Shown: in pieces, positions 1 to 19,410 of the stretch
Layout of the letters: every line of letters begins with the position of its first letter
Numbering within the stretch: position 1 is the stretch's first letter
Assembly (NCBI GenBank): GCA_024626585.2
Contig: JANKJI020000002.1
Coordinates: forward strand, 175,356,252-175,375,661
DNA: 19,410 nt
Direction: 5' to 3'
DNA from: Ginkgo biloba
Lineage: Eukaryota; Plantae; Ginkgophyta
The notes under the pieces: generated by a model
What the model was told of the DNA's origin: nothing
What the model saw: the letters and a program-made list of their open reading frames with translations, nothing else
Database searches by the model: none
Position numbers and translations under genes: made by a program

Positions 1-2243
1 TATTCTTAAGAACAATTACTCTTCTTTCCCTATATCTACAAGTGAAGTGATCCAATCATTTTTAGATGTTGTTTATAGCAACCTTATATAACATAAATAT
101 CAATCCTTAGTCTACATATAATTTGCCTCATCATGTGATAAGCCATTATAATCATGTGCAATGTATCAATAATTTAAGATTATCGAAAATTGTGAAGAGG
201 CACATGAATTGAGGCCATAAATATATAGAAAGTAAACTATGATATAAGTTTCTAGTTGAATAAATATAATAGCATACAAGTCAAAATGAAACTAAGGAGT
301 TAAGTGACTCTATGAAAATAAAGTAGAGTAAGCTAATCAATGGCAAGTATTGTGTTTAAATTCCTTGAATTTATTTTTTTTAAATAATCTCATGAAAATT
401 ATTGTTGTAGTTTTATCTTTCATAGGTTTAATTATTGCAAATCTATATACATATTTAGATATGAACTATTAAATGGAAACCCCTTCTTTAATGCTAGGTA
501 TATTATAATAAAATCATTTATACACATATCACCATTAGCATCTAATGCTTCATGCTAATGATGTTAATCATCCATTTAATTTGAAAATAGTGCCATTATA
601 AGAAAAGGACTTCCATCTTCATTTGTAGACTAGTTCCTTNNNNNNNNNNNNNNNNNNNNNNNNNNNNNNNNNNNNNNNNNNNNTAGAAAACTACTTGGTA
701 TGATTTGTTCATTTGTAAATGTGATTAAAGAATTATTTCATGACATCTAAATGTGAATGTAAGTTTAGTTTTGAGTAGTTATATGACCTACATTATAACT
801 TTAACATGTCCTCATAAATCACTGCCACATGGAAAGGTCTCACTAAAATCTATTGGTATATTTATAAAATATGTCAACAAAGATTTTTTTCTAAATGATC
901 ATTAAGGGAAACAACTATAGTAAGTATATCAAGTTTTTTACATTTGAAAATTACAATGGTAATGCATCTTAATAATAAAATTTCCCATTTTTACCTTCAA
1001 TATTGTGCATAATGTCACACGCTATATTCTCTATACTATACTTGGATAATAAGTCTCAATTTCTTAGTTGCATTATTTTGAACAAAATGATAATTTATAA
1101 GTTTCATCAATTTTCATCTAATTTTCATCAATTTCTTCCAATGATGTGAACATTATAATACAAACTCGTGGCTATTATTTATACTTTCAATTTTAAAGTT
1201 GAGTTTAAATCCATTTTTCATAATTGATTATTACATCAAAGTTAATCATNNNNNNNNNNNNNNNNNNNTCATGTAATTTAATGACATCACTCTTAAGTAA
1301 CTAATTGATTTATGGTTTAATCGTGAATGGGAACCACATAAACCATTGAAATAAGAATGGAGGCTTTGCTCAAATTTTCCCTTGATTTCCTAAAATATGA
1401 TAAGCCATTGCCTATATACAAAAATTTATAAATTCTAAGGTAGAGACCAAATAATATCTCTCAGAAAGAGTCAGAGGAAAAAGAAGAAGTAGGTGTAAAG
1501 ACAAAAAAAATCTTTAGGTAGAGGAAGATGCAAATGTGAGGTGGAGATGAAAGTATAAATGAATCAAAATGGAAAGGGGTTGAAAATTAGGTAGTGGATG
1601 TGTTTTTAGCTCTAAAGAAAGATATGGATGAAGACTTTGTGGTGCTTCATGCTCCTTTGGAGGTTGATGCCATGGTATGGGAATAAGTAAATGTGAATGG
1701 AATTTAATAGCCATGGAGATGAAGATTTAGATTGGCAATGCCCATTGATGGTGGAAAAGATAAAGAGATCTATATAGTTTAAGGATGATCTTCATTTATA
1801 TAGTTTATAATTCATTTCATTTCAAATTTAATATTTCTAACTCAACATTCTAACACCCACTTCAATGCAATTATTAGTGATCTAATATGATTTAATTTAA
1901 GTGTAAAATTAAAAATATTAGGAATGGATGGATGTACACTTCCAATTTTTTTAGACTTATAATATATATAATTATGTGTGAGAGTGAGAGTTTCTCTAAG
2001 ATCATTTTTATTATATAAANNNNNNNNNNNNNNNNNNNNNNNNNNNNNNNNNNNNAAATAATCCACTATATGTACATAAAATATTTAAAGTATTGATGAG
2101 CATGTGTTTTAAAATTTAAATGATATAATAAACATGAAATTCAAGAATATGATCTTGGCATTGTAGTCTGCCTCTTCTTTGAAGATAAAGCTTAACATTA
2201 GAGAAAATAAGATACATTATAAAATGTTAAATGGATTTACAAT

Positions 2244-3030
2244 GATATATGGCTAAAGAGAAAATATATGCACCTTCTTTCATATTCTTTAGCTTTGTAT
2301 TTGATGTCATAAAACTAAGTAACTAGCAGGATAATTGATTCTAAAGGATGTGATCTCCGTAGTTATTAGATAATCATCTATAACAATCCTTATAATGAAA
2401 ATGAAACATTATTTTTGACATGTTAATAGTCTCAAAAGTACAGTGCATCCCAATCCCAACTATGCAACTATACTTGTTTAATTATGAAACATCATAAGTG
2501 AATGATCCTAATTATAATTGAAGGTAATTTTTCCCAACAATTTAAATCATTATATATTAACTATTTTCTTGAGATGATCCTATGGAAAGGAGTTATAATG
2601 CCTCCCTAACTATTTTTTGACACATGGCCAAAGAGGAATCATATGTAACTTCTTTCATTTTTCGAAGCTTTGTATTTGATGCCATAAAATTAATGAACTA
2701 AATAATACAAGAATCCATATAATTAATTAGTGATAGTAAGCATGGACATTCTAGTATAAATAATTATAAAATGTGTTCTCTCCTTGGATATCATATAATC
2801 ATATCCAATAATATTTATGGTGAAAATGAAACAATGTTTTCAACACATTAATAGCCTCAACGGTGCGGTGCACATAATATCCCAAATATTTACTCAATTT
2901 TTTTCTAATATGAAATATCATAAATGAGAAACCCTATTTGCAATGTAAGGTAAGTTTGTTTAGTATCTTAAATAATCATATTCTAACTATTTTATTTGGA
3001 TAATTCTATAACAAGGAAGTCTAATGACTA
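2244..3030 (+). repeat. Diverged tandem duplication, two units (~2244-2610 and ~2619-3030)
   Basis: Shared anchors: atggc.aaagag, agctttgtatttgatg.cataaaa (2291/2666), tgaaaatgaaaca (2396/2821), ttaatag.ctcaa, tatgaaa.atcataa.tga, aaggtaa.ttt, taactatttt. Confidence 0.8.
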
Positions 3031-4744
3031 ATTTTCAATGAAGTAAAAAGAATTATCATATCCATTGACCATTTTCTTATAAATTAGTTTAATTTATAAT
3101 TTATATAAATATCCTTTTCCAACCAATTATTATAGTAATTCCAATAATAGATATTGACATTATATAACAAAAATTAATAACAATTATAAAATTATCTCAT
3201 AACATATGGTACCTACAATATCAAATTTAAATGTAGGTGTTTAATAAAAATCATTTTAATATTAGCATAGTGGATACTCTTATTCCTATTAAACCAAATG
3301 GTATAATCATAAGAGAATGCCCAACATAGGGAAAACACAAATAACATAAATAAAAAACAAGAGATATAAGTTGCCACAATCTCAAAACTTATGATAGTGA
3401 TCTTGCACCAACACACTATCTAATGTGCATTAAGGTCATCCAAGAGTAAAAATTATGAACTACATAACATTATTTCATGATTGGATCATTTATGGAAGAA
3501 AAGTGGTTGATCATTAAGACTTTGTTAGAAATTTTATGGTCAACTTACTGATGAAAGGAAAGTGGCTATTAATATTTTATGAAAGAAACCTAAATAAGTC
3601 ATTGTAGATTTCTCAAATAAGTTATTTCATTTATATCTATATGAATTGCTTTAGTGTTCATTATATTAAATTGAGTTGTATAAATTTATTATTCCATTAA
3701 AGAACTAAAGACTTTTAATGCGCATGGATATGCTTTTAGAGCACATCACAAGTATCTTGAGAGTAAGGAATGGAAATTTTAAATAGATATATATTTGAGA
3801 TCTTTTTATAGTATGAAAAGATACAAAAATAATTGAATACCATGAATACTCTAACTACAANNNNNNNNNNNNNNNNNNNNNNNNNNNNNNNNNNNNNNNN
3901 NNNNNNNNNNNNNNNNNNNNNNNNNNNNNNNNNNNNNNNNNNNNNNNNNNNNNNNNNNNNNNNNNNNNNNNNNNNNNNNNNNNNNNNNNNNNNNNNNNNN
4001 NNNNNNNNNNNNNNNNNNNNNATACCTAATGCCAACACTTTTTGTGACCATTTTATCAATAGGTAGATTATATTTTATATTTTGCCTGGAGAATAGAACT
4101 ATTTGAATAAAATAATTACAATTTTGAATATTTCATAATAATATCCCTAATAAAAGGATGATTTTAATTTATTATTTTTGCTTGTTAACTTTAGCAATAT
4201 CAACACTACACTTATATTTAACTTGTACAATAATATTTAAAACCAAAATTATACTTGAGGTGCAAAGTAGCAACCAACCCTAACTTTGAAAAAATGATTA
4301 AAAATTCTATACCTCCTAAATTACATCTTAAAAAGTAAATTAAATTTCATTTGTAGTGAAAACTTCATTTTTCCCTTATTTGATAATTCAAAATATCTTT
4401 AGAGGGGGTTTACATATTTCTAATATCACATTGTATAAACCTTTAAGAGAAGTATTGATTATGCACTTATAAAAGAGAAGGTCTAAGCAAGTCACACAAA
4501 AAAAGGTCCAAAAGTACATATAAAGAGAGATATTTAAGTACTCATAACACATCATTAATATTATCCCTCCCTGAAAAGAAAGAACTTTGGAGTGATGAGT
4601 TATATTTTCAACTATTTTTTGTAAAATTATAGCAAATAATATTAGGAAGACTTTATATTCCTATGTATATTATCTTAGTAACTTTGTGTCCTTGTTTGAA
4701 AATAGTCATTTATATAGTAAAGATTTTAATTTTATTCGAAAAAA

Positions 4745-5100
4745 AATTAGATTCAGTACAACTTTTTGTTCTCACATCCATAGTTATTTGGATGGAAGTT
4801 TAATTACCATTCAAAAAAATGGAAACTAGTAATTGTCTTAGTCAAGGGTTTATACTACTAGTTCAACTTTATGTTATGACAAAGTTGTAATTTAGATGGT
4901 AGAGTAATTAATATTTAGCAAAATCAAAATCAATAATTTCCATAGTTATAAGTTTCATTTAGTTCAATATTTTCAATATTTAGTGCAACTTTTTATTCTT
5001 ACATTTATAGTCATTTAGATGGTAATGTAGTTATCATTCAACAAATTAGATAACATTCTAAATTTGTTGGCAAAATTTATTTATTTAAGTTTATTCTCCA
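4745..5100 (+). repeat. Degenerate tandem array of about three 105-120 bp units
   Basis: The motif (t/c)agt.caacttt.t.tt...aca...tt(a/g)gatgg.a....t.att recurs at about 4754, 4859 and 4980. Confidence 0.6.
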
Positions 5101-6429
5101 TACATATTAATTGTAAGAATTAACTAAGATGGATTTTTTTATTAAAAGACTAATAACATTTTATAAGAATGAATTTTCAATCATAAGACTAGATTTATTT
5201 AAAGGGTTTGGAGATATCAAGAAGAGGTAAGAAAATATTTCATTCATTCATATTTTAAGGGTCTAATGGCTCTCTATATGCATTCAAAATCATCATTATC
5301 GTGTTTTGGTTTTCTAATATTATTCTATCTAAACTTCCCTTTATTTTGAATTAACAATATAATGACTATATTCATATTAGAACACATCAAAGCATGCAAA
5401 AAGTTCCCATGTGAAGGAACAAAATATATCGCTTGCATTATAGACCCTTATAATCAATTTCCTTACATTTTAGACAAAAATAGTAGGAAATCAACTAATA
5501 CCCCACTTCTCTACATATAATTTTGAAAATTATTTAATCTTTTTAGTAATTGATCTCTAAATAATGAATTATATTCGAATTTACTACAACTTATATATGC
5601 TTATGTCAAAGTAATTTTCTTATATCTTTGAACTTTAGGATCATGGGTGAAAAATGAGTAAACAAAGAATCACACCACAACACNNNNNNNNNNNNNNNNN
5701 NNNNNNNNNNNNNNNNNNNNNNNNNNNNNNNNNNNNNNNNNNNNNNNNNNNNNNNNNNNNNNNNNNNNNNNNNNNNNNNNNNNTAGTTTATAGACATCAA
5801 TGTTGTATTCCTATACAAAATACCATAGTATATCTTCATTGGATGAGTATTTGCAATGTATATAATAACTCACATCTAAAAATTCTTTATAGGGTGATCA
5901 TTTTTGCATCAAATGGTTGTAGTTAAATATCTTTGTATGGTCTAGTATGAAAAATATGTATTACTTAGACTTCAATGGTAAGTGATCATCATTGTTAGTT
6001 ATAAACATCTTATTTTATGATCNNNNNNNNNNACTAATGTGAGGGAATTACAAGTGAGTCATTGGTATTAAAGATAAAAAAATTATACTAAGAACATTAA
6101 AAAATGATGAAAAATAAGAAATAAATGGTGCACAACATACCATGAAAAGGAAAAGGTTTAAATGGCTAGATTTAATAAATAAAATAATAATTTATATGAT
6201 TATTAAAATCATATGATATGTTTATTACTCTCAATCATCACCTTTAGTTAAGTAAAACACAAACACAATAGTATATATGATTCCTAAAAAGACGAAAAAA
6301 TCAATCAAATCTAACATTACACAACCGTCTAAAATACAAGCAAATCAAATCCTTGATATAGCTTATTTTTAACAAATTACAAATCCTACAAGCATAGACT
6401 ACCTCAATTCCATAGAAAATATAGAAAAC

Positions 6430-6864
6430 AACTTAGGAAGGTATGTATTAGAAAGAATATTGTCTTATCCATATAAACCTAGTGATTACTTATTTGATAC
6501 AATATTATATTTGCTAAATAATTAATACTCATGAATTAAATTACAACAAAATCTAGTATTTACATCTAAGGAGAATCTACGATTNNNNNNNNNNNNNNNN
6601 NNNNNNNNNNNNNNNNNNNNNNNNNNNNNNNNNNNNNNNNNNNNNNNNNNNNNNNNNNNNNNNNNNNNNNNATATCCATCTTCTAGAGGTGGCATGTGGG
6701 GTGATTTCTTCTATATAAAATGGTTGATTGTACATAAAAAATAAGATCTTATCATATGGTCATTAACATCATAATAGAAAATTAGATGTACAATATTTGG
6801 TGCATCAAATTAAACAAAAATATATATTCTTTACTCTAACCTATCTTACATTGATGGTCACTTT
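6430..6864 (+). pseudogene. Decayed OTU-like cysteine protease domain, copy 1
   Basis: Translates as LGRYVLERILSYPYKPSDYLFDTILYLLN..[gap]..YPSSRGGMWGDFFYIKWL...IIWSL...IYILYSNLSYIDGHF with several stops. Motif order matches the OTU Cys-box, WG-box and His-box. Confidence 0.55.
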
Positions 6865-7097
6865 TTATTCCATTAGGTAATGAACTTAGTCCAAACCTCT
6901 TTCATATACAGAAGTTTCAACCAAGTTGTCTAAGAGNNNNNNNNNNNNNNNNNNNNNNNNNNNNNNNNNNNNNNNNNNNNNNNNNNNNNNNNNNNNNNNN
7001 NNNNNNNNNNNNNNNNNNNNNNNNNNNNNNNNNNNNNNNNNNNNNNNNNNNNNATAATATAGAAGACATAGATAAGACTTTGGAAATGCATTGCATA

Positions 7098-7536
7098 CAT
7101 TCTTTAAAATGAATAATATCTTATCTATATGGTGTCAAAGACTATATATTTGAAAATATCATTTCATATACTCTAAAATATGAATAATCATCAAATGAGC
7201 TTCAAAATATAGTAGTCCATACATTGAAATAACAATTATACTTAAATATAAGACATAATCTAATGTAAGGAGAATGAGATGCATTACATACATTTATTTC
7301 ATAATCTAAATGAATATGTTTATATAATAATGCATCCATCATTTGAAGGTGGATTGGAGGGAGACATCTTCATTGTCAAATAGTTTGCAGAATACCTAGA
7401 GAAAAGTATTAATGTTTGGTCTTTACAACTACAATCAATAATTATAAAAGAAATGCCCATTAAAGTGTTTATAATGTATAAATATATACTTCACTTAGAT
7501 ATATCATTCAGTAATGGACATTTTGAACCAATTGTT
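7098..7536 (+). pseudogene. Decayed OTU-like cysteine protease domain, copy 2
   Basis: HSLK*IISYLYGVKDYIFENIISYTLKYE*SSNELQNIVV...NLNEYVYIIMHPSFEGGLEGDIFIVK*FAEYLEKSINVWSL...ILHLDISFSNGHFEPIV (GHFEP at 7516-7530), with stops and a frameshift. Confidence 0.6.
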
Positions 7537-8581
7537 TCATCAAGAATAAAAGTATAAAACCCTTTGAAAATAATAATAAAATAAATGCATCATGCCATGA
7601 TGTTTAGAGAAAAAATAATTGTGTGAGAAAATCTCATTTATAGAGTCCAAAAGAAAAGAAATGAGAATATGTATTAACTTATGCTTCTCTAACATCAAAT
7701 GAAATTTTAAACAAACTAGTGATAGAAAATTTCTCACACATAATGGCTAAATAATTAAAGTCATCTATCCCACAGACTCTCAAATACAAAATTAAATCTA
7801 ATAAAGAAGATAAAATATATTATGTGCAGATAAATAATGTGCCAAACTAATAATGTGAGATATTCCACTGCATGTTCTGTAATAAAAATACTATTATTTT
7901 ACTAAAAAGAAATGATAACTATTCATTGAAACTAATCTACAGATTAATAAATCAAATCAAATAATAAATTATGTGATAAATAATTATCATGGTGAAAATA
8001 TTCTCACAATTAGAAGAATGATTAGTCTCATCATGAATAACATTTGCATAAAGTCGCTCACTTGGTTACAAACAAACCCAATATGTAGTAAAAGGAAAAA
8101 TCATAAATGAGTCAAAAAATCTATCAAATGTACAAAATACCATTACCGATGTTATAGATGATAAAATCAGTCTCATAATTACTATTTTAAATGTATTACA
8201 TTATGTGAATATACATATTAGTGTAAATGTGTGCCCTTATAAAACTATGACATCTTTNNNNNNNNNNNNNNNNNNNNNNNNNNNNNNNNNNNNNNNNNNN
8301 NNNNNNNNNNNNNNNNNNNNNNNNNNNNNNNNNNNNNNNNNNNNNNNNNNNNNNNNNGAATTGTGGATTAGAGTTGTGGATTCTTTATATGATTGGTAGC
8401 ATTGAGTTTATATGCTACAATAAGGTTCCTTAAAAGATTAAAAAAAAAAAATCAAATCCAATATTACACAACCATCCAAAATAGGAGCAAATCAAACTTA
8501 ACAATTCGTGTAACTAATTTTTGATAAAGTACAAATTCTACAAGTATAGAATACATCAATCTCATAAAAAATATAGATAAA

Positions 8582-8977
8582 ATATTAGGAAGACATGGAC
8601 TAAAAAGAGTATCGCCTTATTCATATAAACATGTTGATTACTTATTTAATATGATATCATATTTGTTGAATTATTAATTTTTACTAATTAAATTATAATG
8701 AAATTTGGTTTCCACATTCAAGGAGAAACTACAATTAAATAAGAATGAAACCTATTCTAAATATGCTAACTTGCATCATGCACAATCATTTTACCTACAT
8801 AAAATTATTAATTTTAATGAATATTTGAAAAGACTAATGTGGCCATCATTTAAAGATGCCCTATGGGAAGATTTCTTCTATATAAAATGGTTGGTTGAAT
8901 ATCTAAAACAAGTTATTAGCATATGGTGATTAACATTGTAATCAAAATATGGATGCACATAAATTGGTATGTCAAAT
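8582..8977 (+). pseudogene. Decayed OTU-like cysteine protease domain, copy 3 (duplicate of copy 1; includes ORF 8705..8929)
   Basis: Single frame: ILGRHGLKRVSPYSYKHVDYLFNMISYLLNY*FLLIKL**NLVSTFKEKLQ...NFNEYLKRLMWPSFKDALWEDFFYIKWLVEYLKQVISIW*. The His-box would fall in the 8978-9080 gap. Confidence 0.55.
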
Positions 8978-9256
8978 NNNNNNNNNNNNNNNNNNNNNNN
9001 NNNNNNNNNNNNNNNNNNNNNNNNNNNNNNNNNNNNNNNNNNNNNNNNNNNNNNNNNNNNNNNNNNNNNNNNNNNNNNNNGTCTCAACTAGGTCATTTGA
9101 TAGAAGTATGATATGAATATCCTTATAGAAATTCCAAGCCTAGAACTTTAAGTGCCTACACTAAATCTAAGTTCGATAAAATAGTCTACTATAGGAAATT
9201 ATTATATAGAAAAACCAACAACTAATATAGAAAACATGGACAAGACTTTATAAATG

Positions 9257-9708
9257 TATTCTTTAAAATAAATAGCATCTTATCCATATAGTATTGGACA
9301 TTATCTATTTGATACCATCTTATATCTTTTAAAATATCAATGCTCACCAAATGAGCTTCAAAAGATAGTACTCTATATATTCAATAAACAATTATGTTTA
9401 AGTAACAAAGAAATAATCTCATATAAGGAGACTAAGATACATCCCTATATTTACTTGACCTTTATAAAATTCATAATCCAAAAGAATACCTTGATATAAT
9501 TATACATCTAACATATAAAGGTGGATTATGCGGACACCTCTTCTATGCCACTTAGTTGGTAGAAAAACTACAATAACATATTAATGTATGGTATTTATAC
9601 TTGCAATTGGTAATTGGAAAAGCAACACCCACTAAAGTGTCTATAATATACATAAATACACTTCACTTAGGTACACCATTAAATAATATCCATTTCAAAC
9701 CAATTATT
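9257..9708 (+). pseudogene. Decayed OTU-like cysteine protease domain, copy 4 (duplicate of copy 2)
   Basis: YSLK*IASYPYSIGHYLFDTILYLLKYQCSPNELQKIV...(frameshift)...HNPKEYLDIIIHLTYKGGLCGHLFYAT*LVEKLQ*HINVWYL...TLHLGTPLNNIHFKPII. Confidence 0.55.
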
Positions 9709-10769
9709 TCATCAACAATAATAGCATTGAACCCTTAAATAATAAAAGAAATGTGTCAGTCTATGATATGTAGAGTAAACAAAAGTGTATGAAAAAATAC
9801 CATTCATGTAGCTTAATAGAAAAACACACAATACATGAATATATCTCAACTCATGCGCTTTGATAATGGAAAAAATTACTAACAAATAAGTGATTGAAAA
9901 ATTCCCCACATACATTAGGCAGCTAATTGAAATTATATATCACATAGAATCTCAAATACTGATGTGNNNNNNNNNNNNNNNNNNNNNNNNNNNNNNNNNN
10001 NNNNNNNNNNNNNNNNNNNNNNNNNNNNNNNNNNNNNNNNNNNNNNNNNNNNNNNNNNNNNNNNNNGAATATGATGATACATCTAAAGATATGAATATTG
10101 GAGAGGTTAGCTCCTAAAATTAAGCTCCAAATGACAATTCATACCCTCTTGCTCCTTTGTTACATGCAATCACTATTATTAGCTCTTATTATTTATCACA
10201 TGATGCATAATATCTTCGAAGTGCCGTGGGATTTAACCAATCAATCTAGTTTTATTTTTATAAGTTTTTAAATATACAAATTGACACATTAATTGTAGTT
10301 CTTTGTCCTCGGAGCTACCTTTTCATTGATGTGTCTTGCTTATCCCATTAATAATATCAATTTTAAAATTTTAAAAAATAATAATTGTCCTTATGAGTGT
10401 TATATCATTACTTTTGTAATGCTTTTCTAAATTGTAGTGGTTGAAATTTTGCCAAATTGGGGAATAAAACCTTATATTTTGTGGAAAGTTTTACCATAAC
10501 TTCTCTTGCACTCTTTATCTCCAAGTTGTATCATTTACTATCAATCCATTTAGTACTAATAACCCATAAACGCTACACACAATGTTATACTATATAAGGG
10601 TTAGAAGTCACTAATGATTAAGATTATACTACTTTATTCATAATGAACATAAAGGATAAGACCTTGATTTCTCTAAAGGAAATTATAACAACTCCATAAT
10701 TAGTGTTGTTCTTATACACTATTTAATATACTATTTGGTCATGTATTAATATCCCTAAGGGGGTCTTAA

Positions 10770-11150
10770 GAGCATAGTCACATGAGAGGGGGCTAGTTAT
10801 TTTTTTTATGCCCCTCTAGCTTCACTTTTTTAGGAAGTTAAGTATGCATTCTGGTCACATGGTCAGTTGTGAAATTTGATTGCTTAATTTTTTCTCCCTT
10901 TATTTAGTTAAAAAGTGAAGTTTAATGAGTCACTAAATTCTCATAAATGGACACTTACAAACTTTTCTTCCTAAAATTCTTAAGCTTGTCAGAAAAAAAT
11001 CTAGCCCCCATCTTTTTGCAATAGTTCAAGGAAGCTCCTATTTTTGTGAAAAAATCTAACTAGCTACACATATTTTTTTACAATGCAAACTCTAGCTCCT
11101 CTAATTGTGAAACCAAATATTTCCTTTAGCATTCCTATGTGACTACATTC
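10770..11150. mobile_element. Tourist/PIF-Harbinger-like MITE, 381 bp
   Basis: Left end GAGCATAGTCACAT (10770-10783) versus reverse complement of the right end GAATGTAGTCACAT (11137-11150): 11/14 identical, with all mismatches transitions. Flanked by TAA on both sides (10767-10769, 11151-11153). Internal inverted repeat GGGGGCTAG (10788) / CTAGCCCCC (11001). No coding capacity. Confidence 0.65.
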
Positions 11151-12815
11151 TAAGTGAGTCAATTTGATGTAGGACTTTAATTAGTCTTCTAGGCACAAAT
11201 AAATGTTATATTAACTTCTTTATAAAGTATAAAAAGCGATTTTAACTATGTTACATACTTTTATTGATAATTTGGACTATCTTATTGAAAACAAAAACCA
11301 TGTCCAACCACTTCCCTTAAAAAAATACAAATAAAAATAAAACACCCCTTTATTAAACATAATATATATCTATTAATTAGCTCATATTTATTTATATAAA
11401 TGACGATATTAATTTAATGCATAAATCCTATTCTACATTCTCTTATTAATACTTTCACATCTTCTTAACACAATTATTTTATTTAAATTAATTTCAATTG
11501 AAGTAAATGAATTCCATAGAGAAGACGTGGATGTTTTATTGGGGATAGTATAAATGAATTTTGCATAATAGATGTGGATGTATTAATGAGGGATATTGTG
11601 AGAAAATATTTTAATTAAAGTAAATAAATTCCTTCAAGTGGATGTGGTAGTAATGATGGGGGANNNNNNNNNNNNNNNNNNNNNNNNNNNNNNNNNNNNN
11701 NNNNNNNNNNNNNNNNNNNNNNNNNNNNNNNNNNNNNNNNNNNNNNNNNNNNNNNNNNNNNNNTTGTTATTAACAAATATGATTACTTATGAGTTGTCAA
11801 GATGTAATGATGTGTGGAATCAAACACAAATGAGCCTTTGGATGGATTCAAATGCATGGTTATTTTGTGAATTTGCATGGTTTGTAGACATGAATTGAAT
11901 CATGGAAAATTTAATCGAAGATCTCAAATATTTGAAGCTAAGCTATTAGTATCTCTTCTCTATTACATTAAGGTTATGCACATTTATGTTTATAACCATA
12001 GTTGCCTTCATCTTGATTCACTACATAGGAATATCATTGTTGATATCAATGATAGGAGACAGGAGTACATAGTGTTAATGATATCTAGACTTTTCTTATT
12101 GGTAGTCATTTGTGGGTTATTTTATTATAAATCAAAGGCAATGTATTTGATGGAAGTATCATGATATCACCCTCTAGATGCATAGCGAATGCTTTTTACC
12201 CATTTCATAGAGCAATCCATTCTATCAGGGAAATTCATGCTTAAGAACTTATATTTCCAAAGAAGAATTCTGGAAAGAGTTGGAGTTAGTTGCAAAAATA
12301 TGGCCATACCTCCAAGCTTGCACTACATTCCTTCGAGAACCATAGTTGAAGCCTTTTTGACAAATGCAAAGATAGTAATGTTTACCTGCATACATGATTT
12401 GTTCTAGAAAAGCCAAGTGCATCCCAAAGAAATTCAAGTCTTAGCAACAAACTACGTCTTCAATCCTCACCATCTTTAGTTACATTGATAATGAAAAATC
12501 TAAGATTCATAACAACATCAAGACCTTTAATCTTACATGAATGGAAGGTAGCACTAATATAATTTCACTAGATGTAGCAAGAAATTATCTTTAGAGTTCA
12601 CACTGGTGGGATGTATCGCATTGTTGTGTGCACAGAGAATATAACACAAAATTGGTATTTGGGAAACCATATGTCCNNNNNNNNNNNNNNNNNNNNNNNN
12701 NNNNNNNNNNNNNNNNNAATTCTACTATGCAACAAAAGAAGAGATTTGTACAAAGCCAAATGTAGGCTTTTCAATATTATAAGAAACAACTACATAAAAA
12801 ATGGAAATGTGCCAT

Positions 12816-12834
12816 AAAAAAAAAAAAAAAAAAA
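12816..12834 (+). repeat. Poly(A) run, 19 nt
   Basis: Directly visible; possibly the tail of a decayed non-LTR retroelement. Confidence 0.8.
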
Positions 12835-13063
12835 TTAATACTTAACTAACAATACTGTTGTTATGACAATTATTACCACACGTAATGGCTAGTGATTAAC
12901 AAAAATAATGACAATGATTCCTCACAAAAACTTCTAGAAATAAAATCGAATTTTTTTACACAATGCACGGCAAATTTATATTGGTATTTATTAACCAAAG
13001 GTTCAAGCCATAGAAAAAAAAAAACCCTGAACAAAGAGNNNNNNNNNNNNNNNNNNNNNNNNN

Positions 13064-13338
13064 CAGAAAGACATACGCTGTTAAATTAACAATATTCCGT
13101 ATAATACGCTTGGAAGGCATATTTACGGCGCCTAGGGTACAAAAATACGTAGAACAACCGTAGAGAGATTCGTAGCAGGGCATTTGCGAAAATCTTTTGT
13201 CATTCATTTCTCTTTCTGCAGAGGGCTTCAATTATCTGAACTTATTTGAGGACCAAGTTCGATGCTCCATTACCAGGCTCGTGCACGTCAATGCTTCCTA
13301 GAGCATTTTCAAAGTTGAATCTTATCATTGCGTTGTTG
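13064..13338 (+). promoter_or_regulatory. CpG-retaining patch; probable promoter / transcription start region of the PTB gene
   Basis: 13 CpG counted in about 275 nt, against near absence of CpG in the upstream 12.8 kb. Contains a CACGTCA (bZIP-type ACGT core) at about 13284-13290. Lies 1.6-1.8 kb upstream of the ATG. Confidence 0.5.
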
Positions 13339-14125
13339 NNNNNNNNNNNNNNNNNNNNNNNNNNNNNNNNNNNNNNNNNNNNNNNNNNNNNNNNNNNNNN
13401 NNNNNNNNNNNNNNNNNNNNNNNNNNNNNNNNNNNNNNNNNNNNNNNNNNNNNNNNNNNNNNNNNNNNNNNNNNNNNNNNNNNNNNNNNNNNNNNNNNNN
13501 NNNNNNNNNNNNNNNNNNNNNNNNNNNNNNNNNNNNNNNNNNNNNNNNNNNNNNNNNNNNNNNNNNNNNNNNNNNNNNNNNNNNNNNNNNNNNNNNNNNN
13601 NNNNNNNNNNNNNNNNNNNNNNNNNNNNNNNNNNNNNNNNNNNNNNNNNNNNNNNNNNNNNNNNNNNNNNNNNNNNNNNNNNNNNNNNNNNNNNNNNNNN
13701 NNNNNNNNNNNNNNNNNNNNNNNNNNNNNNNNNNNNNNNNNNNNNNNNNNNNNNNNNNNNNNNNNNNNNNNNNNNNNNNNNNNNNNNNNNNNNNNNNNNN
13801 NNNNNNNNNNNNNNNNNNNNNNNNNNNNNNNNNNNNNNNNNNNNNNNNNNNNNNNNNNNNNNNNNNNNNNNNNNNNNNNNNNNNNNNNNNNNNNNNNNNN
13901 NNNNNNNNNNNNNNNNNNNNNNNNNNNNNNNNNNNNNNNNNNNNNNNNNNNNNNNNNNNNNNNNNNNNNNNNNNNNNNNNNNNNNNNNNNNNNNNNNNNN
14001 NNNNNNNNNNNNNNNNNNNNNNNNNNNNNNNNNNNNNNNNNNNNNNNNNNNNNNNNNNNNNNNNNNNNNNNNNNNNNNNNNNNNNNNNNNNNNNNNNNNN
14101 NNNNNNNNNNNNNNNNNNNNNNNNN
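13339..14125. other. Largest assembly gap (787 N), probably hiding part of the PTB 5' UTR and its intron donor
   Basis: N run between the CpG-rich patch and the intron-like sequence upstream of the 14700 acceptor. Confidence 0.85.
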
Positions 14126-14700
14126 TAATATTTGAGTGGTAAAGTTCACAACTTTAAAATGTTTAAAATTTTAGAGGCAACTTGAATTTGAGTCCAATGA
14201 TTCTTTTTCTTGTTGTACTTGAGGCGTGGGAGTTGGAGCCATTATGGTTGTAGGGGTTTCAAAAGTTGCCAGTATAGGGGTTTTAAGGGGTTTCTGAGAG
14301 AAAATGCATGCAGTTGAATGGCCTATAAAGACTATTTAGTATTGGAAATTTTGGTAATATGAATATGACTCAGTTCTTCATCCTGAATTTCCCTCCGCAA
14401 TATGTGCCTGTCATCTACTGCTGACCAACACCAATATCATGCATTCTAGAGCAGAAAACTTATGCTATATGTTAAAAACTTTAAATCTTTATTATTACAT
14501 CCATGCTTAGTTTGATTGATCAGGTTTGCCCATTTCATTTTAGCTGGGGTGTATGGGGAATTTAACTTTGTATTTTTGCAGAGCACAGAATTCTTTCATT
14601 TTTATTTTAGTATGTTCTTCAAGATAGCAGCTCCCATGTTTCATATGTACAATTATTTATGTGACACGCACAGCTGTCCACAAATCTTTTCTTCTTCCAG

Positions 14701-14888
14701 GGTTTGAAGGCAAGAGACCATATTTGACTTCATTCTTACAATCCTTTGTGGGGACTGGACTTGATCAGAAATTGATTTGGTGAAATGCTTTACATCAATT
14801 TGATTGGAGTTGTTTTACTCTCTTAGTTGGACCAAGAGGTAGAGCGACATAGTTAGAATTTTGTAGTCAGCGTCACAGTTTGAACAAA
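14701..14888 (+). other. Probable 5' UTR part of the ATG-containing exon, preceded by a 5' UTR intron
   Basis: Strong acceptor tcttttcttcttccag| ending at 14700, with U-rich intron-like sequence upstream (14126-14700). Alternative AGs occur at 14826 and 14866. The matching donor probably lies in the 13339-14125 gap. Confidence 0.55.
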
Positions 14889-15071
14889 ATGGCTTCAGCT
14901 GGGCAACCACAGTTCCGCTACACTCAGCCACCCTCAAAAGTTCTGCACCTCAGGAATCTACCCTGGGAGTGTACCGAAGAGGAACTTATTGAACTTGGCA
15001 AGCCTTTTGGTAAAATTATCAACACAAAAGTCAATGTTGGAGCCAATCATAACCAGGCTTTTGTTGAATTT
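14889..15071 (+). CDS. PTB: PTB coding exon 1 (start codon, N-terminal half of RRM1)
   Basis: ATG at 14889 in context aaaATGG; SKVLHLRNLP and QAFVEF RRM motifs; donor TTT|GTAAGT at 15072. Confidence 0.96.
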
Positions 15072-17203
15072 GTAAGTATTTTGCCTTCCTATATTGCAAG
15101 CTCCTTGAATTATTTCTGAAATTTATCTGATTAATTGCACTTTACACTGGGCATTGCGATTCGATCCTCGTGGAAACATCATATGCAGAAAAAAAAATGT
15201 AAGATGAGAAAATAACCTAGATCATGGTTTGGGTCGAGATGTTAAACAANNNNNNNNNNNNNNNNNNNNNNNNNNNNNNNNNNNNNNNNNNNNNNNNNNN
15301 NNNNNNNNNNNNNNNNNNNNNNNNNNNNNNNNNNNNNNNNNNNNNNNNNTTGCTGAGAATGATGTTTATACTAGGAAGATTTCGGAACCATTGCTTTTAA
15401 CATTGTAGGAGGAAATAGGTGCAGTATCTGACCTTGGTATTTTTATTTGGAAGTCAAATCTTCTCATGCATGTGGGTATATTTTTCCATATTAATAGTCT
15501 TTAGTTGCCTTGCTAAAATTTGGATTGCACTTTGTAATGCCCTATAGGCGGATTTGAATCAAGCCATTGCAATGGTTTCATATTATGCTTCCTCATCTGA
15601 GCCAGCTCAGGTACGAGGCAAAACTGTCTATCTTCAATACTCCAACAGGCAAGAAATTGTCAACAGCAAAAATTCTGGGGATGTTGCCAGCAATGTTCTT
15701 CTGGTGACCATTGAGGGTGTAGAGGCTGGCGATGTCAGCATTGATGTTCTGCATTTGGTAAGTCTCTAGAACTCTACAGTGGAATCTCCAGGTCCTGGAG
15801 CATTAAAGGTATTATAGTCCCTCAAAATCAACGCTAGCTTTGGTTTCACAGTAGCTAATATTTTATTGTTATTGTTCCATTTACAGACGAGTGTAGGAGA
15901 TATTGAACGATATTTGATGTGTCTTGTCTTGTGAATTTCAGTGACAAACAAGGGGTTATACTTTATGTATGGCTTGTGTTTGACATAACTCTACATGGAT
16001 CAGCAGGTCCATGTCACGGACACATCTTCGATGGCTGCCTACTGCATTGGGAGAAAGCGCACGTGTGTTTGTTTCCTCCCCTTTGCTTAACCCTGCCTCT
16101 CGACCCTACTCCTGCTCCTAACCCTACCTCCTGACAAGTTGAGATTGTTGTTGATTCATCTCACTGCTCTTTACCATTTTTGCCTTAAAACCTCATTTAC
16201 ATCCATGCAACCTAGGTTATCAAAGCTTTTTGAGGTTGGGCAATTGCTTTCTTTGGGTCTGCCTTATTGGAATGGATCATTGTTTGTACCAGTTTAGTAA
16301 TATTGATCAACTGTTAGGAAAAAGATAGTGTAGAAGTAATTTATCTGGAGATGTGTNNNNNNNNNNCCTTGGTGCTGTTTTCCTGTAATATTTGTAGTTG
16401 TTGGGTTTGGGTTGCTTCATAGAGGTTGTCCAAGAATAATTTGGAGGGTTGATATCAAATATGTTTTGCATTGTTAGCTTCAATTGTTTGATGCAATCAA
16501 GAAATTATTTATTTTATACATATTAGGAACGCTTCCATTTGTATTTTTGTTATGTTAGTTATTAATAAGTTTGCCTTTAGTGAACTTCCTGTACAGTTTG
16601 TATTTGTGTGATGAAGCTGCTGGATGCTTCCTAGCAAGATAGACTTTTGAGTACAGCAACTTGATGGGAAGTTGTCTGCTTTGTATTTTAGGAGGTATCC
16701 ATTTGAGTGAGAATCTCATTATCTGCTTTATGCTGCAGGTTTTCTCAGCCTTTGGTTTTGTGCATAAGATTGCTACCTTTGAGAAGAGTGCTGGTTTTCA
16801 GGTTTTGTAATTTTGAAAATCTGTTAGCAAGATGCTCATAGTCGAAGAAAAGCATTGTATCAGGGTGTCTCTCTATTTTTGTGATTCTTATACAATTTAA
16901 TTTCTGTACAGGCTTTGGTGCAATTTAGTGACTCAAACACTGCTGCCACTGCAAAAAATGCACTGGATGGAAGAAGCATTCCAAGGTGAATGCACATTTT
17001 ACATATGATCAACAATCATGTGTGCTACAGTTGCATATTGTACAGAGTTTCTAGTGGGTCTATGATTCACTTACATTGCTGTTTGTGTTTCATGTGTTTG
17101 AATCTAGATATCTGCTTCCAGAGCATGTGGGACCATGCAACCTGCGAATAACTTTTTCTGCACACAATGACTTAAATGTGAAATTTCAGAGTCATCGGAG
17201 TAG
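14889..17203 (+). CDS. PTB: Polypyrimidine tract-binding protein, plant PTB1/PTB2 clade; spliced and 3'-partial: join(14889..15071,15548..15757,16739..16801,16912..16985,17108..17203)
   Basis: Manual splicing gives MASAGQPQFRYTQPPSKVLHLRNLPWECTEEELIELGKPFGKIINTKVNVGANHNQAFVEF/ADLNQAIAMVSYYASSSEPAQVRGKTVYLQYSNRQEIVNSKNSGDVASNVLLVTIEGVEAGDVSIDVLHL/VFSAFGFVHKIATFEKSAGFQ/ALVQFSDSNTAATAKNALDGRSIPR/YLLPEHVGPCNLRITFSAHNDLNVKFQSHRS(R). This is 626 nt with no stops, all introns GT-AG and phases 0,0,0,2,2. It is recognisable as RRM1+RRM2 of plant PTB1/2. The expected next exon (DYTNPYL...) was not found before 19410. Confidence 0.97.
15548..15757 (+). CDS. PTB: PTB coding exon 2 (end of RRM1, linker, start of RRM2)
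   Basis: Acceptor cctatag|GCG; 210 nt encoding ADLNQAIAM...SIDVLHL; donor TTG|GTAAGT at 15758. Confidence 0.96.
16004..16062 (+). other. Candidate poison (PTC-introducing) cassette exon of PTB
   Basis: GC-richer island in the intron after coding exon 2, with a NAGNAG acceptor (CAGCAG 16001-16006) and donor CAC|GTGTGT at 16063. It is 59 or 56 nt, so frameshifting. Its position corresponds to the AS-NMD cassette exon known from Arabidopsis PTB1/PTB2. Longer forms starting at 15887 or 15942 are also possible. Confidence 0.72.
16066..16133 (+). promoter_or_regulatory. C/U-rich intronic element directly downstream of the cassette exon (putative PTB-binding splicing element)
   Basis: tttgtttcctcccctttgcttaaccctgcctctcgaccctactcctgctcctaaccctacctcct is strikingly C-rich compared with the U/A-rich intron around it and is not positioned as a 3' splice-site tract for any coding exon. 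Confidence 0.6.
16739..16801 (+). CDS. PTB: PTB coding exon 3 (RRM2)
   Basis: Acceptor tgctgcag|GTT; 63 nt encoding VFSAFGFVHKIATFEKSAGFQ; donor CAG|GTTTTG. Not in the ORF track. Confidence 0.95.
16912..16985 (+). CDS. PTB: PTB coding exon 4 (RRM2)
   Basis: Acceptor tttctgtacag|GCT; 74 nt encoding ALVQFSDSNTAATAKNALDGRSIP(R); donor AG|GTGAAT. Confidence 0.95.
17108..17203 (+). CDS. PTB: PTB coding exon 5 (end of RRM2)
   Basis: Acceptor aatctag|A; 96 nt encoding (R)YLLPEHVGPCNLRITFSAHNDLNVKFQSHRS(R); donor AG|GTACGA. Confidence 0.95.
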
Positions 17204-19410
17204 GTACGAAGAACATTTTTTGAGTTATTGTTGTGATGGATGCAGATAATTGGGCATTCTTTGGAAAGTTCAAGCAGGGTATTGGGTACTTTATCAATAT
17301 GTCCTTAATCTGGTGTAAGATTTTCTGCACATTTAGGTGTACATTGTTTGTGTTTGTGCTGTGATGATGCATCTGAATATGTTGGATAGATATGCATATT
17401 TTTCCAGAAACAGTGAACATGCAGTTTTTTAGGGCCCTTTGGATGCCTGCTAGAGTCCCGATGACTTTTGTCCATTGGGATTATATGCTATTATACCTAG
17501 GCTAGCTCTGGATGGGTGCTTTCAGTGAGAAAGCTATGAATTTATTTGTGACATATCTAGTGCATGGCTAGAGAACTGTTCTGGATGAAATCACTCAGCA
17601 GTCATATATTATAGTTGATGAATGCAAATACGTTAAAGGACTTATTCTGATTTGTGGATTTTAATAAAAGAAATCATCTAGAAGTATTATGGAAAAGGAT
17701 GGGAACTAGTGATTTCTTGAGAGTTGTGACTTGCAAATACACACTGTTTCAAAAGGTCGAGCAAGTAGGAAAATATTTTAAGGATGTTGCAAGGAGACTT
17801 CATACCATATAGGAGCAAGCCATTGCCACTTTCCTCCTCCAGTTTTGGAATATACATTGACAATCCAGAGCTTGAATTCAAAGAAAAATGCTGCACATGG
17901 ACATGAGTAAAACTTTTCAGTCTCTTCTACTACTATCTTTAGATTGTGGCTCTATTATCTTGATATTTCAAGTCAAACATTGTAAATAAGATGATGATTG
18001 CATTTTTTTTTTTCTTTTAGTTGTAAAAATATGATTCTACTAATGGGAAAAGTTACAAGCTTTACCACAAAATCGGTTGGCTTAGGCACACCCTCAACAC
18101 CCCGGTGTAAGTGAAAACTGATTGTTCATGGCTTAGAACATAAACAAAAAAACCTTGCCCCAAAACCCTCGAGAGCATAAGCTACCAAGCACATATGGTA
18201 GAATGCAAGGGCAATAAACTTGATCACATAAGATCATAGGACCCTAGCCCAAAGAGAAAAGGGGTCTAAAAAATATTAACCACAAAACTTTAGAAACTAG
18301 ACATAAATNNNNNNNNNNNNNNNNNNNNNNNNNNNNNNNNNNNNNNNNNNNNNNNNNNNNNNNNNNNNNNNNNNNNNNNNNNNNNNNNNNNNNNNNNNNN
18401 NNNNNNNNGTGTAGTATGTGGGTACGACAGTTTGGGGGCTTAAAAAAATTATATATAGCTACAAATTTTAAACAATCTAGATTCTATACCCATTGTCATT
18501 TATCCATGCAGTTAACAATGGTTATCGATGCATGAAATTCAAAATGTTAATAATTTATTCTTAGGTACATTGAGAATTTGAGATACATGTCCATTGTTAA
18601 ATGACAAAATAAAAATGGCAAGTTGCACAATAATGTCTTTACAAATTTTTCAGTGCTTATAATGATGTTTGTTTTTTTGTTAGTGGCTTCATATAGTCAG
18701 TTCTTTAAGTTATGGTTAGTATTTAGAGTTAGCTACTGGGGTTTTGTTGTTGATGCTGTTGTTGTTTGTGCTTTTCTTGTTTTTAAGTTCTTTTGTGACC
18801 TCTACTTCTATTTGTGGGTATGCCAAGGTTTGCTTGAGTACTTCCCTGATTGTACTAGCATAGGGTAGTGTACTTATATATCTGGTACGATATCTATCCC
18901 AATATTCATCCCCACCACCTTGGGTACACACAACCGACAACTGTGCTTGTAAGCAAGGTGGAAATGATTTAGACATGAATTGGGATGATTCATCCTTTTT
19001 CATAGCAAAGCAATATGGATGATTCGTTGTAATCTTTCATAATTACACTGATTATTCCATACAAATCTTGAGTACAATGCTTCAATGTGTAACGGTTAGG
19101 AAATTATTGATTGGAGAAGATCGATGATTCATGTGCCACATAGGGTGTCCTATTTTTACATACAATAGGAGGGTTGCTATCAAATCTTGCAACGCTTATT
19201 TAATGATGCCTTTTCATTATAATAAATGGCTAATCATAATTAATATTGAGTTGGGCCTCAACTTTGCTTGTGATTGGCTCATACCTGTTGTGACTAATGT
19301 GCAAGGGATTGTGATTTGCCTTGTGATAGAATACCTAGTACGTCATCAAAGTGCTGATACTTTCACTGATGTGGAATCACATCAATAAACACCTAATTTA
19401 ATAGGATCGA

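What the first reader, a model, noticed from the sequence alone, without database searches (positions are those of the whole stretch)
15887..16062. Hidden poison cassette exon in the PTB gene: a self-limiting AS-NMD switch invisible to the ORF track
Seen: the intron between coding exons 2 and 3 contains an exon-like island ending ...GATGGCTGCCTACTGCATTGGGAGAAAGCGCAC|GTGTGT (donor at 16063), with a CAGCAG tandem acceptor at 16001-16006. Inclusion of 59 or 56 nt shifts the frame, and the shifted frame runs through exons 3-4 to a TAA at 17149-17151, 52 nt before the next donor and with further exons expected downstream. Established: Arabidopsis PTB1/PTB2 auto- and cross-regulate through a PTC-introducing cassette exon targeted by NMD. 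From memory (unverified), translated 3' ends of that cassette resemble the (R)WLPTALGES / WEKAH readings here. Inference: the same circuit, with sequence-level conservation of a non-coding exon, exists in this probably non-angiosperm lineage, which would make it very ancient.
Basis: partly seen in the sequence, partly recalled or inferred. Interest (0 to 1): 0.8.

Follow-up and report, generated by a model that had tools for sequence, protein, structure and literature searches.

The report
Land-plant-wide conserved PTB poison exon
An intron of this gymnosperm-like PTB splicing-regulator gene holds a 56-base frame-breaking "poison" exon whose sequence is about 85% identical from liverworts and mosses to flowering plants, so the self-limiting splicing switch known from Arabidopsis PTB1/2 most likely dates back to the first land plants.

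Summary
RNA joints confirm the flanking exons.

- The block from about 15977 to 16130 is the only alignable part of the exon 2-exon 3 intron. It covers the acceptor, the exon, a GUGUGU donor and a pyrimidine tract.
- It matches the same intron of PTB1/2-type genes at 86.6% in Amborella, 85.6% in Marchantia, 84% in Physcomitrium, 79% in Actinidia PTB2 and 67% in Oryza. A Brassicaceae PTB2-like gene also matches.
- The exon itself (82-88% identity) is better conserved than the neighbouring coding exons (78-80%).
- In 17 distinct genomic copies and one mRNA contig its length (47, 55, 56 or 58 nt) is never a multiple of three.
- A fully spliced monocot mRNA contig includes the homologous exon at the same boundaries.

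In this organism, one run's contigs join exon 2 to 16007. The 16062>16739 joint was not seen, and NMD sensitivity and PTB dependence could not be tested.

Papers I could search report the event only in angiosperms. This is a new member of a known kind, with much deeper conservation than published.

The parts
14889..15071 (+). Coding exon 1 (ATG to the first part of RRM1)
   Evidence: Joint 15071>15548 in four runs. Pfam RRM_1 E = 8.5e-08.
15548..15757 (+). Coding exon 2. It ends in phase 0, with donor GTAAGT at 15758.
   Evidence: Joints 15071>15548 and 15757>16739. The peptide is 100% identical to Marchantia PTB exon 2.
15977..16006 (+). Conserved intronic flank upstream of the poison exon. 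It holds a branch-point-like TTGAC (15980-15984) and the tandem acceptor CAGCAG (16001-16006).
   Evidence: 12 of 30 columns are invariant in 17 distinct copies, and YAGCAG is invariant. The upstream pyrimidine content is only 0.51, so this is a weak 3' splice site.
16007..16062 (+). Poison cassette exon, 56 nt (59 nt if the proximal AG is used, starting at 16004)
   Evidence: Joint 15757>16007 in X5 contigs. Frame shift and PTC. 82-88% nt identity to Amborella, Physcomitrium and Marchantia. The homologous exon is included in the spliced mRNA contig L040.
16063..16068 (+). Poison-exon donor, GUGUGU
   Evidence: GTGTGTTTGT is invariant in all 18 aligned copies. It matches the published 'PTB2 motif' loop consensus (PMC12218528). 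Use of this donor in this organism was not observed.
16049..16080 (+). Predicted hairpin with the donor GU in its loop (GGGAG.AAGCG.AC / GU.UGUUU.CUCCC)
   Evidence: MFE hairpin with local z = -2.5, found again in the longer fold. The RNAalifold consensus stem has no covariation. Structure is unproven.
16069..16135 (+). Pyrimidine-rich tract downstream of the poison exon, CCU-rich with three ACCCTRC units: candidate PTB binding platform
   Evidence: 16063-16135 is 77% pyrimidine against 53% in the rest of the intron. The tract is pyrimidine-rich in all copies. [quoted passage not shown]
16739..16801 (+). Coding exon 3 (start of the RRM2 core)
   Evidence: Joints 15757>16739 and 16801>16912.
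16912..16985 (+). Coding exon 4
   Evidence: Joints 16801>16912 and 16985>17108.
17108..17203 (+). Coding exon 5. It is spliced onward to an exon outside the window.
   Evidence: Joint 16985>17108, and 32 reads with a common loose end at 17203.
17149..17151 (+). Premature TAA reached when the poison exon is included
   Evidence: Frame computation. It lies 52 nt before the exon-5 donor, with further junctions downstream.

Best explanation
Window 16007 (or 16004)-16062 is the orthologue of the Arabidopsis PTB1/PTB2 poison cassette exon, sitting in a gymnosperm-like PTB1/2-type gene.

How it most likely works:
- Default splicing joins exon 2 (ends 15757) to exon 3 (starts 16739) and makes full-length PTB. 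This is shown.
- When PTB protein is abundant, it binds the conserved pyrimidine tract just downstream of the weak GUGUGU donor (16063-16135). That tract may also form the 3' arm of a hairpin holding the donor. Binding promotes recognition of the 56-nt exon, which otherwise has weak splice sites. This is inferred from Arabidopsis.
- Inclusion shifts the frame. Translation stops at TAA 17149-17151, far upstream of the normal stop and of many exon junctions, so the mRNA should be removed by NMD. This is inferred.
- The result is negative feedback on PTB level.

The whole module is conserved at the nucleotide level in liverwort, moss, gymnosperm, Amborella, monocot and eudicot genes. It therefore probably arose no later than the last common ancestor of land plants.
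For: Anatomy and frame.

Exon model and exon-5 onward splicing from RNA reads.

Use of the 16007 acceptor: joint 15757>16007 (GT..AG) in X5 contigs, depth 15.6 against 41.9 for the productive joint.

Orthology of the gene.

Conservation of the block inside the same intron:
- Amborella 86.6% over 134 nt; Actinidia PTB2 79% over 125 nt; Physcomitrium 84% over 131 nt.
- Marchantia 85.6% over 132 nt.
- Oryza 67% over 147 nt.
- Cochlearia PTB2-like, profile E = 1e-38. That protein is 88% identical to a Noccaea protein named PTB-like 2.
- 32 metagenome plant contigs carry the motif. In every one whose flanks are held it lies between exon-2-like and exon-3-like sequence.

Strength of constraint: the exon is 82-88% identical while the coding exons are 78-80%, third codon positions 50-60% and the flanking intron 59-63% (background).

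Splice signals: YAGCAG and GTGTGTTTGT are invariant.

Frame breaking: length is always non-3n and a PTC follows in every species tested.

Use as an exon elsewhere:
- The spliced mRNA contig L040 reads E1-E2-47 nt-E3-E4-E5 with the same boundaries.
- Annotated or assembled ORFs read E2-exon-shifted E3 in Gossypium and an unnamed monocot-like source (P0104, P0036, P0124).

Literature:
- AtPTB1/2 cassette exon, NMD, auto- and cross-regulation (PMC3355609).
- Downstream pyrimidine motifs and PTB1/2 binding are required for inclusion (PMC10914923).
- 'PTB2 motif' hairpin with GUGUGU in the loop and a pyrimidine 3' arm (PMC12218528).
Against: - No 16062>16739 (or nearby) joint was listed in any of the four runs.
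- The three polyA raw-read runs showed no poison-exon joint at the threshold of 3 reads. Only about 6% of each run was read, and the productive joint itself had just 7-14 reads.
- The single acceptor joint comes from one short contig (26 nt on its shorter side). Reads show a second PTB copy about 95% similar in E1-E2, so the contig could belong to that paralogue.
- The PTC lies only 52 nt from the next junction and the exon carries no stop of its own. NMD therefore relies on later junctions and a long 3' UTR.
- NMD sensitivity and PTB dependence are untested in any non-angiosperm.
- The hairpin has no covariation support.
Confidence: 0.78

Rival explanations
1. The conserved block acts mainly through partial splicing or intron detention in this lineage. 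Exon 2 is joined to 16007, but the downstream part of the intron (16063-16738) stays unspliced. The result is nuclear-detained or NMD-prone transcripts rather than a clean cassette isoform. It would still be a PTB-level brake, but by a different route.
For: - In X5 the 15757>16007 joint (depth 15.6) is present without any exon>E3 joint.
- A 1,038-nt unspliced contig covers the whole intron at depth 13.3, against about 5-8 for the other introns.
- PolyA runs X21 and X23 hold about 10 unspliced reads in this intron and none in the >2 kb intron after exon 5 (all).
- Several database ORFs from other plants read from the exon straight through the donor into the intron (P0043, P0094).
Against: - The donor GTGTGTTTGT is invariant over about 470 million years, which argues that it is used.
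- The monocot mRNA contig L040 uses both junctions.
- Fully spliced poison isoforms are expected to be rare at steady state because of NMD.
- Contig depths are crude.
Confidence: 0.13
2. The block is an intronic regulatory or structured RNA element (a splicing enhancer/silencer or a protein-binding hairpin) that tunes exon 2-exon 3 splicing and is not used as an exon in this organism.
For: - Conservation runs beyond the exon on both sides, 15913-16236 against Marchantia.
- Two helices are predicted that would hold the acceptor and the donor.
- No complete cassette transcript was seen here.
Against: - An acceptor joint is seen in X5.
- AG and GT are invariant exactly at the predicted boundaries.
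- Length is always non-3n.
- The homologue is spliced in as an exon in angiosperm transcripts.
- There is no covariation and no Rfam family.
Confidence: 0.05
3. Inclusion makes a functional truncated protein (RRM1 plus the linker, about 209 aa) rather than an NMD substrate.
For: The shifted ORF is long here: 78 residues past exon 2, with no stop until exon 5.
Against: - Exon length differs between lineages (47/55/56/58 nt), so the shifted frame and the tail peptide are not conserved. In most species the tail ends after about 10-15 shifted-frame residues into exon 3.
- Variability inside the exon shows no codon-like period.
- In Arabidopsis the isoform is an NMD target (PMC3355609).
Confidence: 0.03

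Closest known systems
Arabidopsis thaliana PTB1 (At3g01150) / PTB2 (At5g53180) cassette exon, splice variant SPII (Stauffer et al. 2010; reviewed in PMC3355609; PMC10914923)
   Same: - Same gene clade.
- Same intron: between the exon ending ...SIDVLHL and the exon starting VFSAFGFVHK.
- Homologous nucleotide sequence, shown through Brassicaceae PTB2-like L041 and Actinidia PTB2 L003.
- Inclusion gives a PTC.
- A pyrimidine-rich tract lies directly downstream of the exon.
   Different: - The host is a gymnosperm-like genome.
- The exon is 56/59 nt and has no stop of its own. The PTC comes three exons later, whereas in the angiosperms, moss and liverwort examined it falls in exon 3.
- Regulation by PTB and NMD is not demonstrated here.
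- I did not read the A. thaliana locus itself.
'PTB2 motif' structured-RNA candidate (RNA Biol 2025, PMC12218528)
   Same: - A hairpin overlapping the 3' end of the cassette exon.
- The 5' splice site sits in the loop, with GUGUGU.
- The 3' arm is pyrimidine-rich.
- Covariation is weak or absent: R-scape E = 0.87 in the paper, none here.
   Different: The paper reports it only in Pentapetalae genes annotated PTB2 (93 species) and says it is absent from annotated PTB1 and PTB3 homologues. Here the same sequence is found in a gymnosperm-like gene, Amborella, Oryza ('PTB homolog 1-like'), Physcomitrium ('PTB homolog 1') and Marchantia.
Catsnap survey of the PTB2 SPII event (New Phytol 2023, PMC10952736)
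   Same: It reports that the truncated SPII-type product is recognisable across species, so the event is conserved.
   Different: It reached 41 species 'up to monocots', at the protein-string level. Here the conservation is shown at the DNA level and extends to gymnosperm, moss and liverwort.
Mammalian PTBP1 exon 11 skipping and the ultraconserved poison exons of SR/hnRNP genes
   Same: Autoregulatory AS-NMD of a splicing regulator, with the non-coding exon more conserved than the coding sequence.
   Different: - Mammalian PTBP1 (like AtPTB3) uses exon skipping, not inclusion.
- There is no sequence homology.
- The origin is independent.

Membership tests
AtPTB1/2-type AS-NMD poison cassette exon | The host gene is a PTB1/2-clade polypyrimidine tract-binding protein | tested here: met
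   Exon peptides are 95% identical to a conifer-type 528-aa PTB (the cluster includes Picea sitchensis ADE77057.1). They are 88-92% identical to Amborella, Sphagnum, Marchantia, Physcomitrium and Selaginella PTB proteins. RRM_1 is present in exon 1.
AtPTB1/2-type AS-NMD poison cassette exon | The cassette lies in the homologous intron and is homologous in sequence to the angiosperm PTB2 cassette | tested here: met
   The block aligns within the E2-E3 intron of Actinidia PTB2 (79%), Cochlearia PTB2-like (profile E = 1e-38), Oryza and Amborella. The A. thaliana locus itself was not read.
AtPTB1/2-type AS-NMD poison cassette exon | Inclusion introduces a premature termination codon | tested here: met
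   56 or 59 nt gives a frame shift and TAA 17149-17151. The same logic holds in five other species.
AtPTB1/2-type AS-NMD poison cassette exon | Both splice sites of the cassette are used in vivo | tested here: inconclusive
   The acceptor joint 15757>16007 is seen in one contig of X5. No donor joint is seen. Raw polyA runs were read too shallowly. Both junctions are present in the monocot mRNA contig L040.
AtPTB1/2-type AS-NMD poison cassette exon | The inclusion isoform is degraded by NMD | not testable with these tools
   This needs NMD-inhibited or NMD-mutant RNA. Only the features are present: a PTC far upstream of many junctions.
AtPTB1/2-type AS-NMD poison cassette exon | Inclusion is promoted by PTB1/2 binding to pyrimidine motifs downstream of the exon | tested here: inconclusive
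   The tract is present and conserved as pyrimidine-rich: 77% pyrimidine at 16063-16135. Binding and its effect were not testable.
PTB2 motif (PMC12218528) | A hairpin of about 14 bp with the cassette-exon 5' splice site (GUGUGU) in the terminal loop and a pyrimidine-rich 3' arm | tested here: met
   A 12-bp hairpin at 16049-16080 holds the donor GU in its loop. GTGTGTTTGT is invariant.
PTB2 motif (PMC12218528) | The structure is supported by covariation | tested here: not met
   There are 0-1 compensatory pairs, and 47-271 of 500 shuffles reach the observed values. The authors also found none (E = 0.87). The pairing could simply follow from a purine-rich exon end facing a pyrimidine tract.
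Rfam families | A match to a curated covariance model | tested here: not met
   Only chance-level snoRNA matches, E = 8-10.

The most novel reading that the evidence does not exclude
The roughly 150-nt module is a land-plant-wide ultraconserved non-coding element, kept for roughly 450-500 million years and more conserved than the protein-coding exons around it. It comprises a weak tandem acceptor, a non-3n exon, a GUGUGU donor in a hairpin loop and a pyrimidine tract.

If so, it would be one of the oldest sequence-conserved poison exons known in plants. It would also mean that PTB homeostasis by AS-NMD was already fixed in the first embryophytes. It was not detected in the one zygnematophyte alga examined.

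A stronger version: the two predicted helices hold both splice sites closed, and PTB binding to the 3' arm opens the donor, so the element would be an RNA switch read by its own protein.
Probability: 0.55. Interest if true: 0.72.

Novelty: new member of a known kind. Interest (0 to 1): 0.62.

Why it matters
PTB proteins are master regulators of alternative splicing in plants.

- **Age of the circuit.** The poison exon and its flanking control sequences are nearly unchanged from liverworts to flowering plants. That dates this feedback loop to the origin of land plants. The depth I could find in the searchable literature is Pentapetalae (PMC12218528) or angiosperms 'up to monocots' (PMC10952736).
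- **A rare kind of element.** It adds a deeply conserved non-coding element to the plant record.
- **Where to look for function.** Nucleotide-level constraint marks the positions that must matter: YAGCAG, the purine-rich exon end, GUGUGUUUGU and the CCU-rich tract.
- **Testability.** The mechanism can be tested in tractable haploid models (Marchantia, Physcomitrium) where NMD mutants exist.
- **Annotation.** Gene callers repeatedly turn this exon into bogus short 'proteins'. Dozens of such ORFs appeared.

Tried and rejected
- **Rfam** scan of 15700-16350: only chance snoRNA matches.
- **Covariation test** of the donor hairpin and of a second RNAalifold helix that pairs the acceptor with the middle of the exon: no signal beyond shuffles. 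The fold of the whole exon region has z = -0.39.
- **Alternative upstream acceptors** at 15887 and 15941, which would put a stop inside the exon: not conserved and no joints, so rejected as the main form.
- **Closterium (Zygnematophyceae) PTB locus L006:** no homologue by blastn or by nhmmer profile. This is one gene of one alga, so absence is weak.
- **Word search on the exon-plus-shifted-exon-3 part of Gossypium P0104**, run to find inclusion-type ORFs from gymnosperms: only three hits, two annotated Gossypium and one unnamed with the same Gossypium-type exon string.
- **Locus look-ups that failed:**
  - Selaginella P0238, Diphasiastrum P0302 and Cryptomeria P0301 were not on record.
  - Taxus P0288 returned no DNA.
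  - So no lycophyte, fern, hornwort or second gymnosperm locus was examined.
- **Papers not held:** Burgess & Freeling 2014 and Rühl et al. 2012. I cannot exclude that the first lists this element as a deep conserved non-coding sequence.
- **Joined model not searched.** Exons were searched one by one by reference. Joining was done only inside scripts, to locate stops.
- **Chance or splicing noise** as an explanation: rejected on the E-values and the invariance of the splice signals.
Full report
**1. What is in the window**

The + strand from 14889 onward encodes the N-terminal part of a PTB-type RNA-binding protein.

RNA reads from three polyA RNA-seq runs (X21-X23) and contigs of a fourth run (X5) give GT..AG joints at 15071>15548, 15757>16739, 16801>16912 and 16985>17108. 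They also give a common loose end at 17203 that reads on into the next, out-of-window exon.

The exons are therefore:
- E1 14889-15071
- E2 15548-15757
- E3 16739-16801
- E4 16912-16985
- E5 17108-17203

E1 matches Pfam RRM_1.

Exon by exon, the peptides are 95% identical to a 528-aa protein known only from RNA assemblies (P0184). They are 94.7% identical to members of a cluster that contains Picea sitchensis ADE77057.1. They are 88-92% identical to PTB proteins of Amborella, Sphagnum, Physcomitrium, Marchantia and Selaginella.

The source is thus most likely a gymnosperm. Another agent's unchecked note calls this genome Ginkgo.

Exons were searched singly by reference, and joining was done only inside scripts to locate stop codons.

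**2. Check of the observation**

- CAGCAG at 16001-16006.
- ...GAGAAAGCGCAC|GTGTGT with the GT at 16063.
- Exon lengths of 59 or 56 nt, both 2 mod 3.
- E2 ends in phase 0. The shifted frame passes through E3 and E4 and stops at TAA 17149-17151 in E5, 52 nt before the E5 donor.

The stated start 15887 belongs to an upstream candidate acceptor. That site is not conserved and is not seen in RNA.

**3. RNA evidence in this organism**

- X5 contigs hold a GT..AG joint 15757>16007, the distal AG of the tandem acceptor. Its depth is 15.6, against 41.9 for the productive 15757>16739 joint.
- No joint from 16062 (or nearby) to 16739 was listed in any run.
- The raw polyA runs were sampled at about 6% and have only 7-14 reads on the productive joint. 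A rare NMD-sensitive isoform would fall under the 3-read listing threshold.
- Intron 2 carries about 10 unspliced polyA reads, and an unspliced X5 contig at depth 13.3. The longer intron after E5 carries no polyA reads and depth 5-8 in X5. This hints at slow or regulated removal.
- Caveat: reads with a linked set of differences in E1-E2 show a second, roughly 95% similar PTB copy. The short junction contig could stem from that copy.

**4. Conservation**

A 70-aa exon-2 query against 1.84 billion representative proteins returned many short ORFs that run from ...SIDVLHL into unexpected sequence.

- SSMAAYCIGRK (P0032)
- RWQLIAWGERAH (Ambrosia P0090)
- LVHPEKEHM followed by frame-shifted exon 3 (Gossypium P0104; unnamed P0036 and P0124)

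Named loci were then fetched and compared. Window 15980-16110 matches, always inside the E2-E3 intron:

| Species | Identity | Length | E-value |
|---|---|---|---|
| Amborella | 86.6% | 134 nt | 1.5e-35 |
| Marchantia polymorpha | 85.6% | 132 nt | 2.4e-34 |
| Physcomitrium patens | 84% | 131 nt | 2.6e-31 |
| Actinidia rufa PTB2 | 79% | 125 nt | 4.7e-25 |

- With a longer query (the intron from 15758 to 16356), Oryza brachyantha matches at 67% over 147 nt, E = 8e-11.
- A profile built from the alignment also finds a Brassicaceae PTB2-like gene (Cochlearia, E = 1e-38).
- Nothing else in the intron aligns.
- A motif scan of metagenome contigs gave 32 plant contigs. In every one whose flanks are held, the motif lies between exon-2-like and exon-3-like sequence.

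Against Amborella, Physcomitrium and Marchantia, in that order, nucleotide identity is as follows:

| Region | Identity |
|---|---|
| Poison exon | 88 / 82 / 86% |
| Coding exons E1-E5 | 80 / 78 / 79% |
| Third codon positions | 50-60% |
| Flanking intron (alignment background) | 59-63% |

- YAGCAG and GTGTGTTTGT are invariant in all 18 aligned copies.
- Exon length is 55, 56 or 58 nt in 17 distinct genomic copies and 47 nt in one mRNA contig, never a multiple of three.
- Inclusion gives a PTC in every species modelled.
- Variability within the exon has no codon-like pattern.
- The Closterium (Zygnematophyceae) orthologue has no detectable counterpart.

**5. Proof that the homologous block is an exon elsewhere**

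Contig L040 (an RNA assembly of SRR13259239, with a grass-type exon 2 ending ...VLPDAVSIDVLHL) is a fully spliced E1-E2-47 nt-E3-E4-E5 transcript.

The 47 nt align to the rice and window exon. They begin at the column after CAGCAG and end before GTGTGT.

**6. Mechanism**

In Arabidopsis, PTB1 and PTB2 promote inclusion of this cassette exon in their own and each other's pre-mRNA, and the product is an NMD target (PMC3355609). [quoted passage not shown]

The window has the same layout:
- A weak acceptor: pyrimidine fraction 0.51 upstream, and a conserved branch-point-like TTGAC 23 nt upstream of the distal acceptor AG (16005-16006).
- A purine-rich exon end.
- A weak CAC|GUGUGU donor.
- A 77% pyrimidine, CCU-rich tract at 16063-16135.

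The region 16049-16080 folds into a 12-bp hairpin with the donor GU in the loop. This is the description of the published 'PTB2 motif' (PMC12218528).

RNAalifold also proposes a helix pairing the acceptor with the middle of the exon. Neither helix shows covariation, so structure remains a hypothesis. A purine-rich exon end facing a pyrimidine tract would pair in any case.

Steps shown: the gene model, the exon homology, the frame-breaking design and use of the acceptor. Steps inferred: use of the donor here, NMD and PTB dependence.

**7. Comparison with what is known, and novelty**

The circuit itself is known. The published phylogenetic range I could find is:
- Pentapetalae PTB2 for the motif. 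The paper states explicitly that it was not found in annotated PTB1/PTB3 homologues (PMC12218528).
- 41 species 'up to monocots' for SPII-like truncated products (PMC10952736).

The ULE catalogue and the angiosperm conserved-AS survey that I checked do not mention PTB. Burgess & Freeling 2014 could not be read.

Within those limits, two results appear to be new:
- The element's presence in a gymnosperm-like genome, a moss and a liverwort.
- Its conservation above the level of the coding sequence.

I file it as a new member of a known kind with a markedly deeper evolutionary reach.

**8. Verdict**

- Observation: confirmed.
- Interpretation: supported.
- Confidence in the AS-NMD poison-exon reading: 0.78.
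- Main rival: partial splicing or intron detention using the same element, 0.13.
- Interest: 0.62.

Noticed in passing
window 19363-19410: X5 contig depth jumps to about 24,000, with many divergent loose ends. This is the edge of a very abundant repeat or a highly expressed sequence at the window's end.
   Followed up: no
window 15017, 15018, 15026, 15038, 15592, 15598: A linked set of differences occurs in up to 4 of 10 RNA reads, and each such read carries several other differences. A second, roughly 95% similar PTB copy (paralogue or allele) is expressed and maps onto exons 1-2. An earlier scan note (s1-637035) reports another PTB gene 56 Mb away on the same piece.
   Followed up: partly
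window 15758-16738 versus 17204-19300: The poison-exon intron carries about 10 unspliced polyA reads (runs X21 and X23). The >2 kb intron after exon 5 carries none. The poison-exon intron may be slow to splice or detained.
   Followed up: partly
L006 (Closterium) 1150-1236 and 1295-1507; 3339-3431 and 3511-3591: Exon-2-like and exon-5-like peptides each hit twice in tandem in the Closterium PTB gene. These are either duplicated exons or an assembly/annotation artefact.
   Followed up: no
proteins P0001-P0125: Dozens of database 'proteins' of 80-200 aa are gene-caller artefacts. They read from PTB exon 2 into the intron or into the poison exon. Some are annotated as hypothetical proteins in Gossypium, Actinidia and Ambrosia.
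   Followed up: partly
window 15913-15976 and 16136-16236: Weaker but detectable similarity to Marchantia extends about 90 nt upstream and about 100 nt downstream of the core block (72% over 327 nt). This suggests further regulatory sequence around the module.
   Followed up: no
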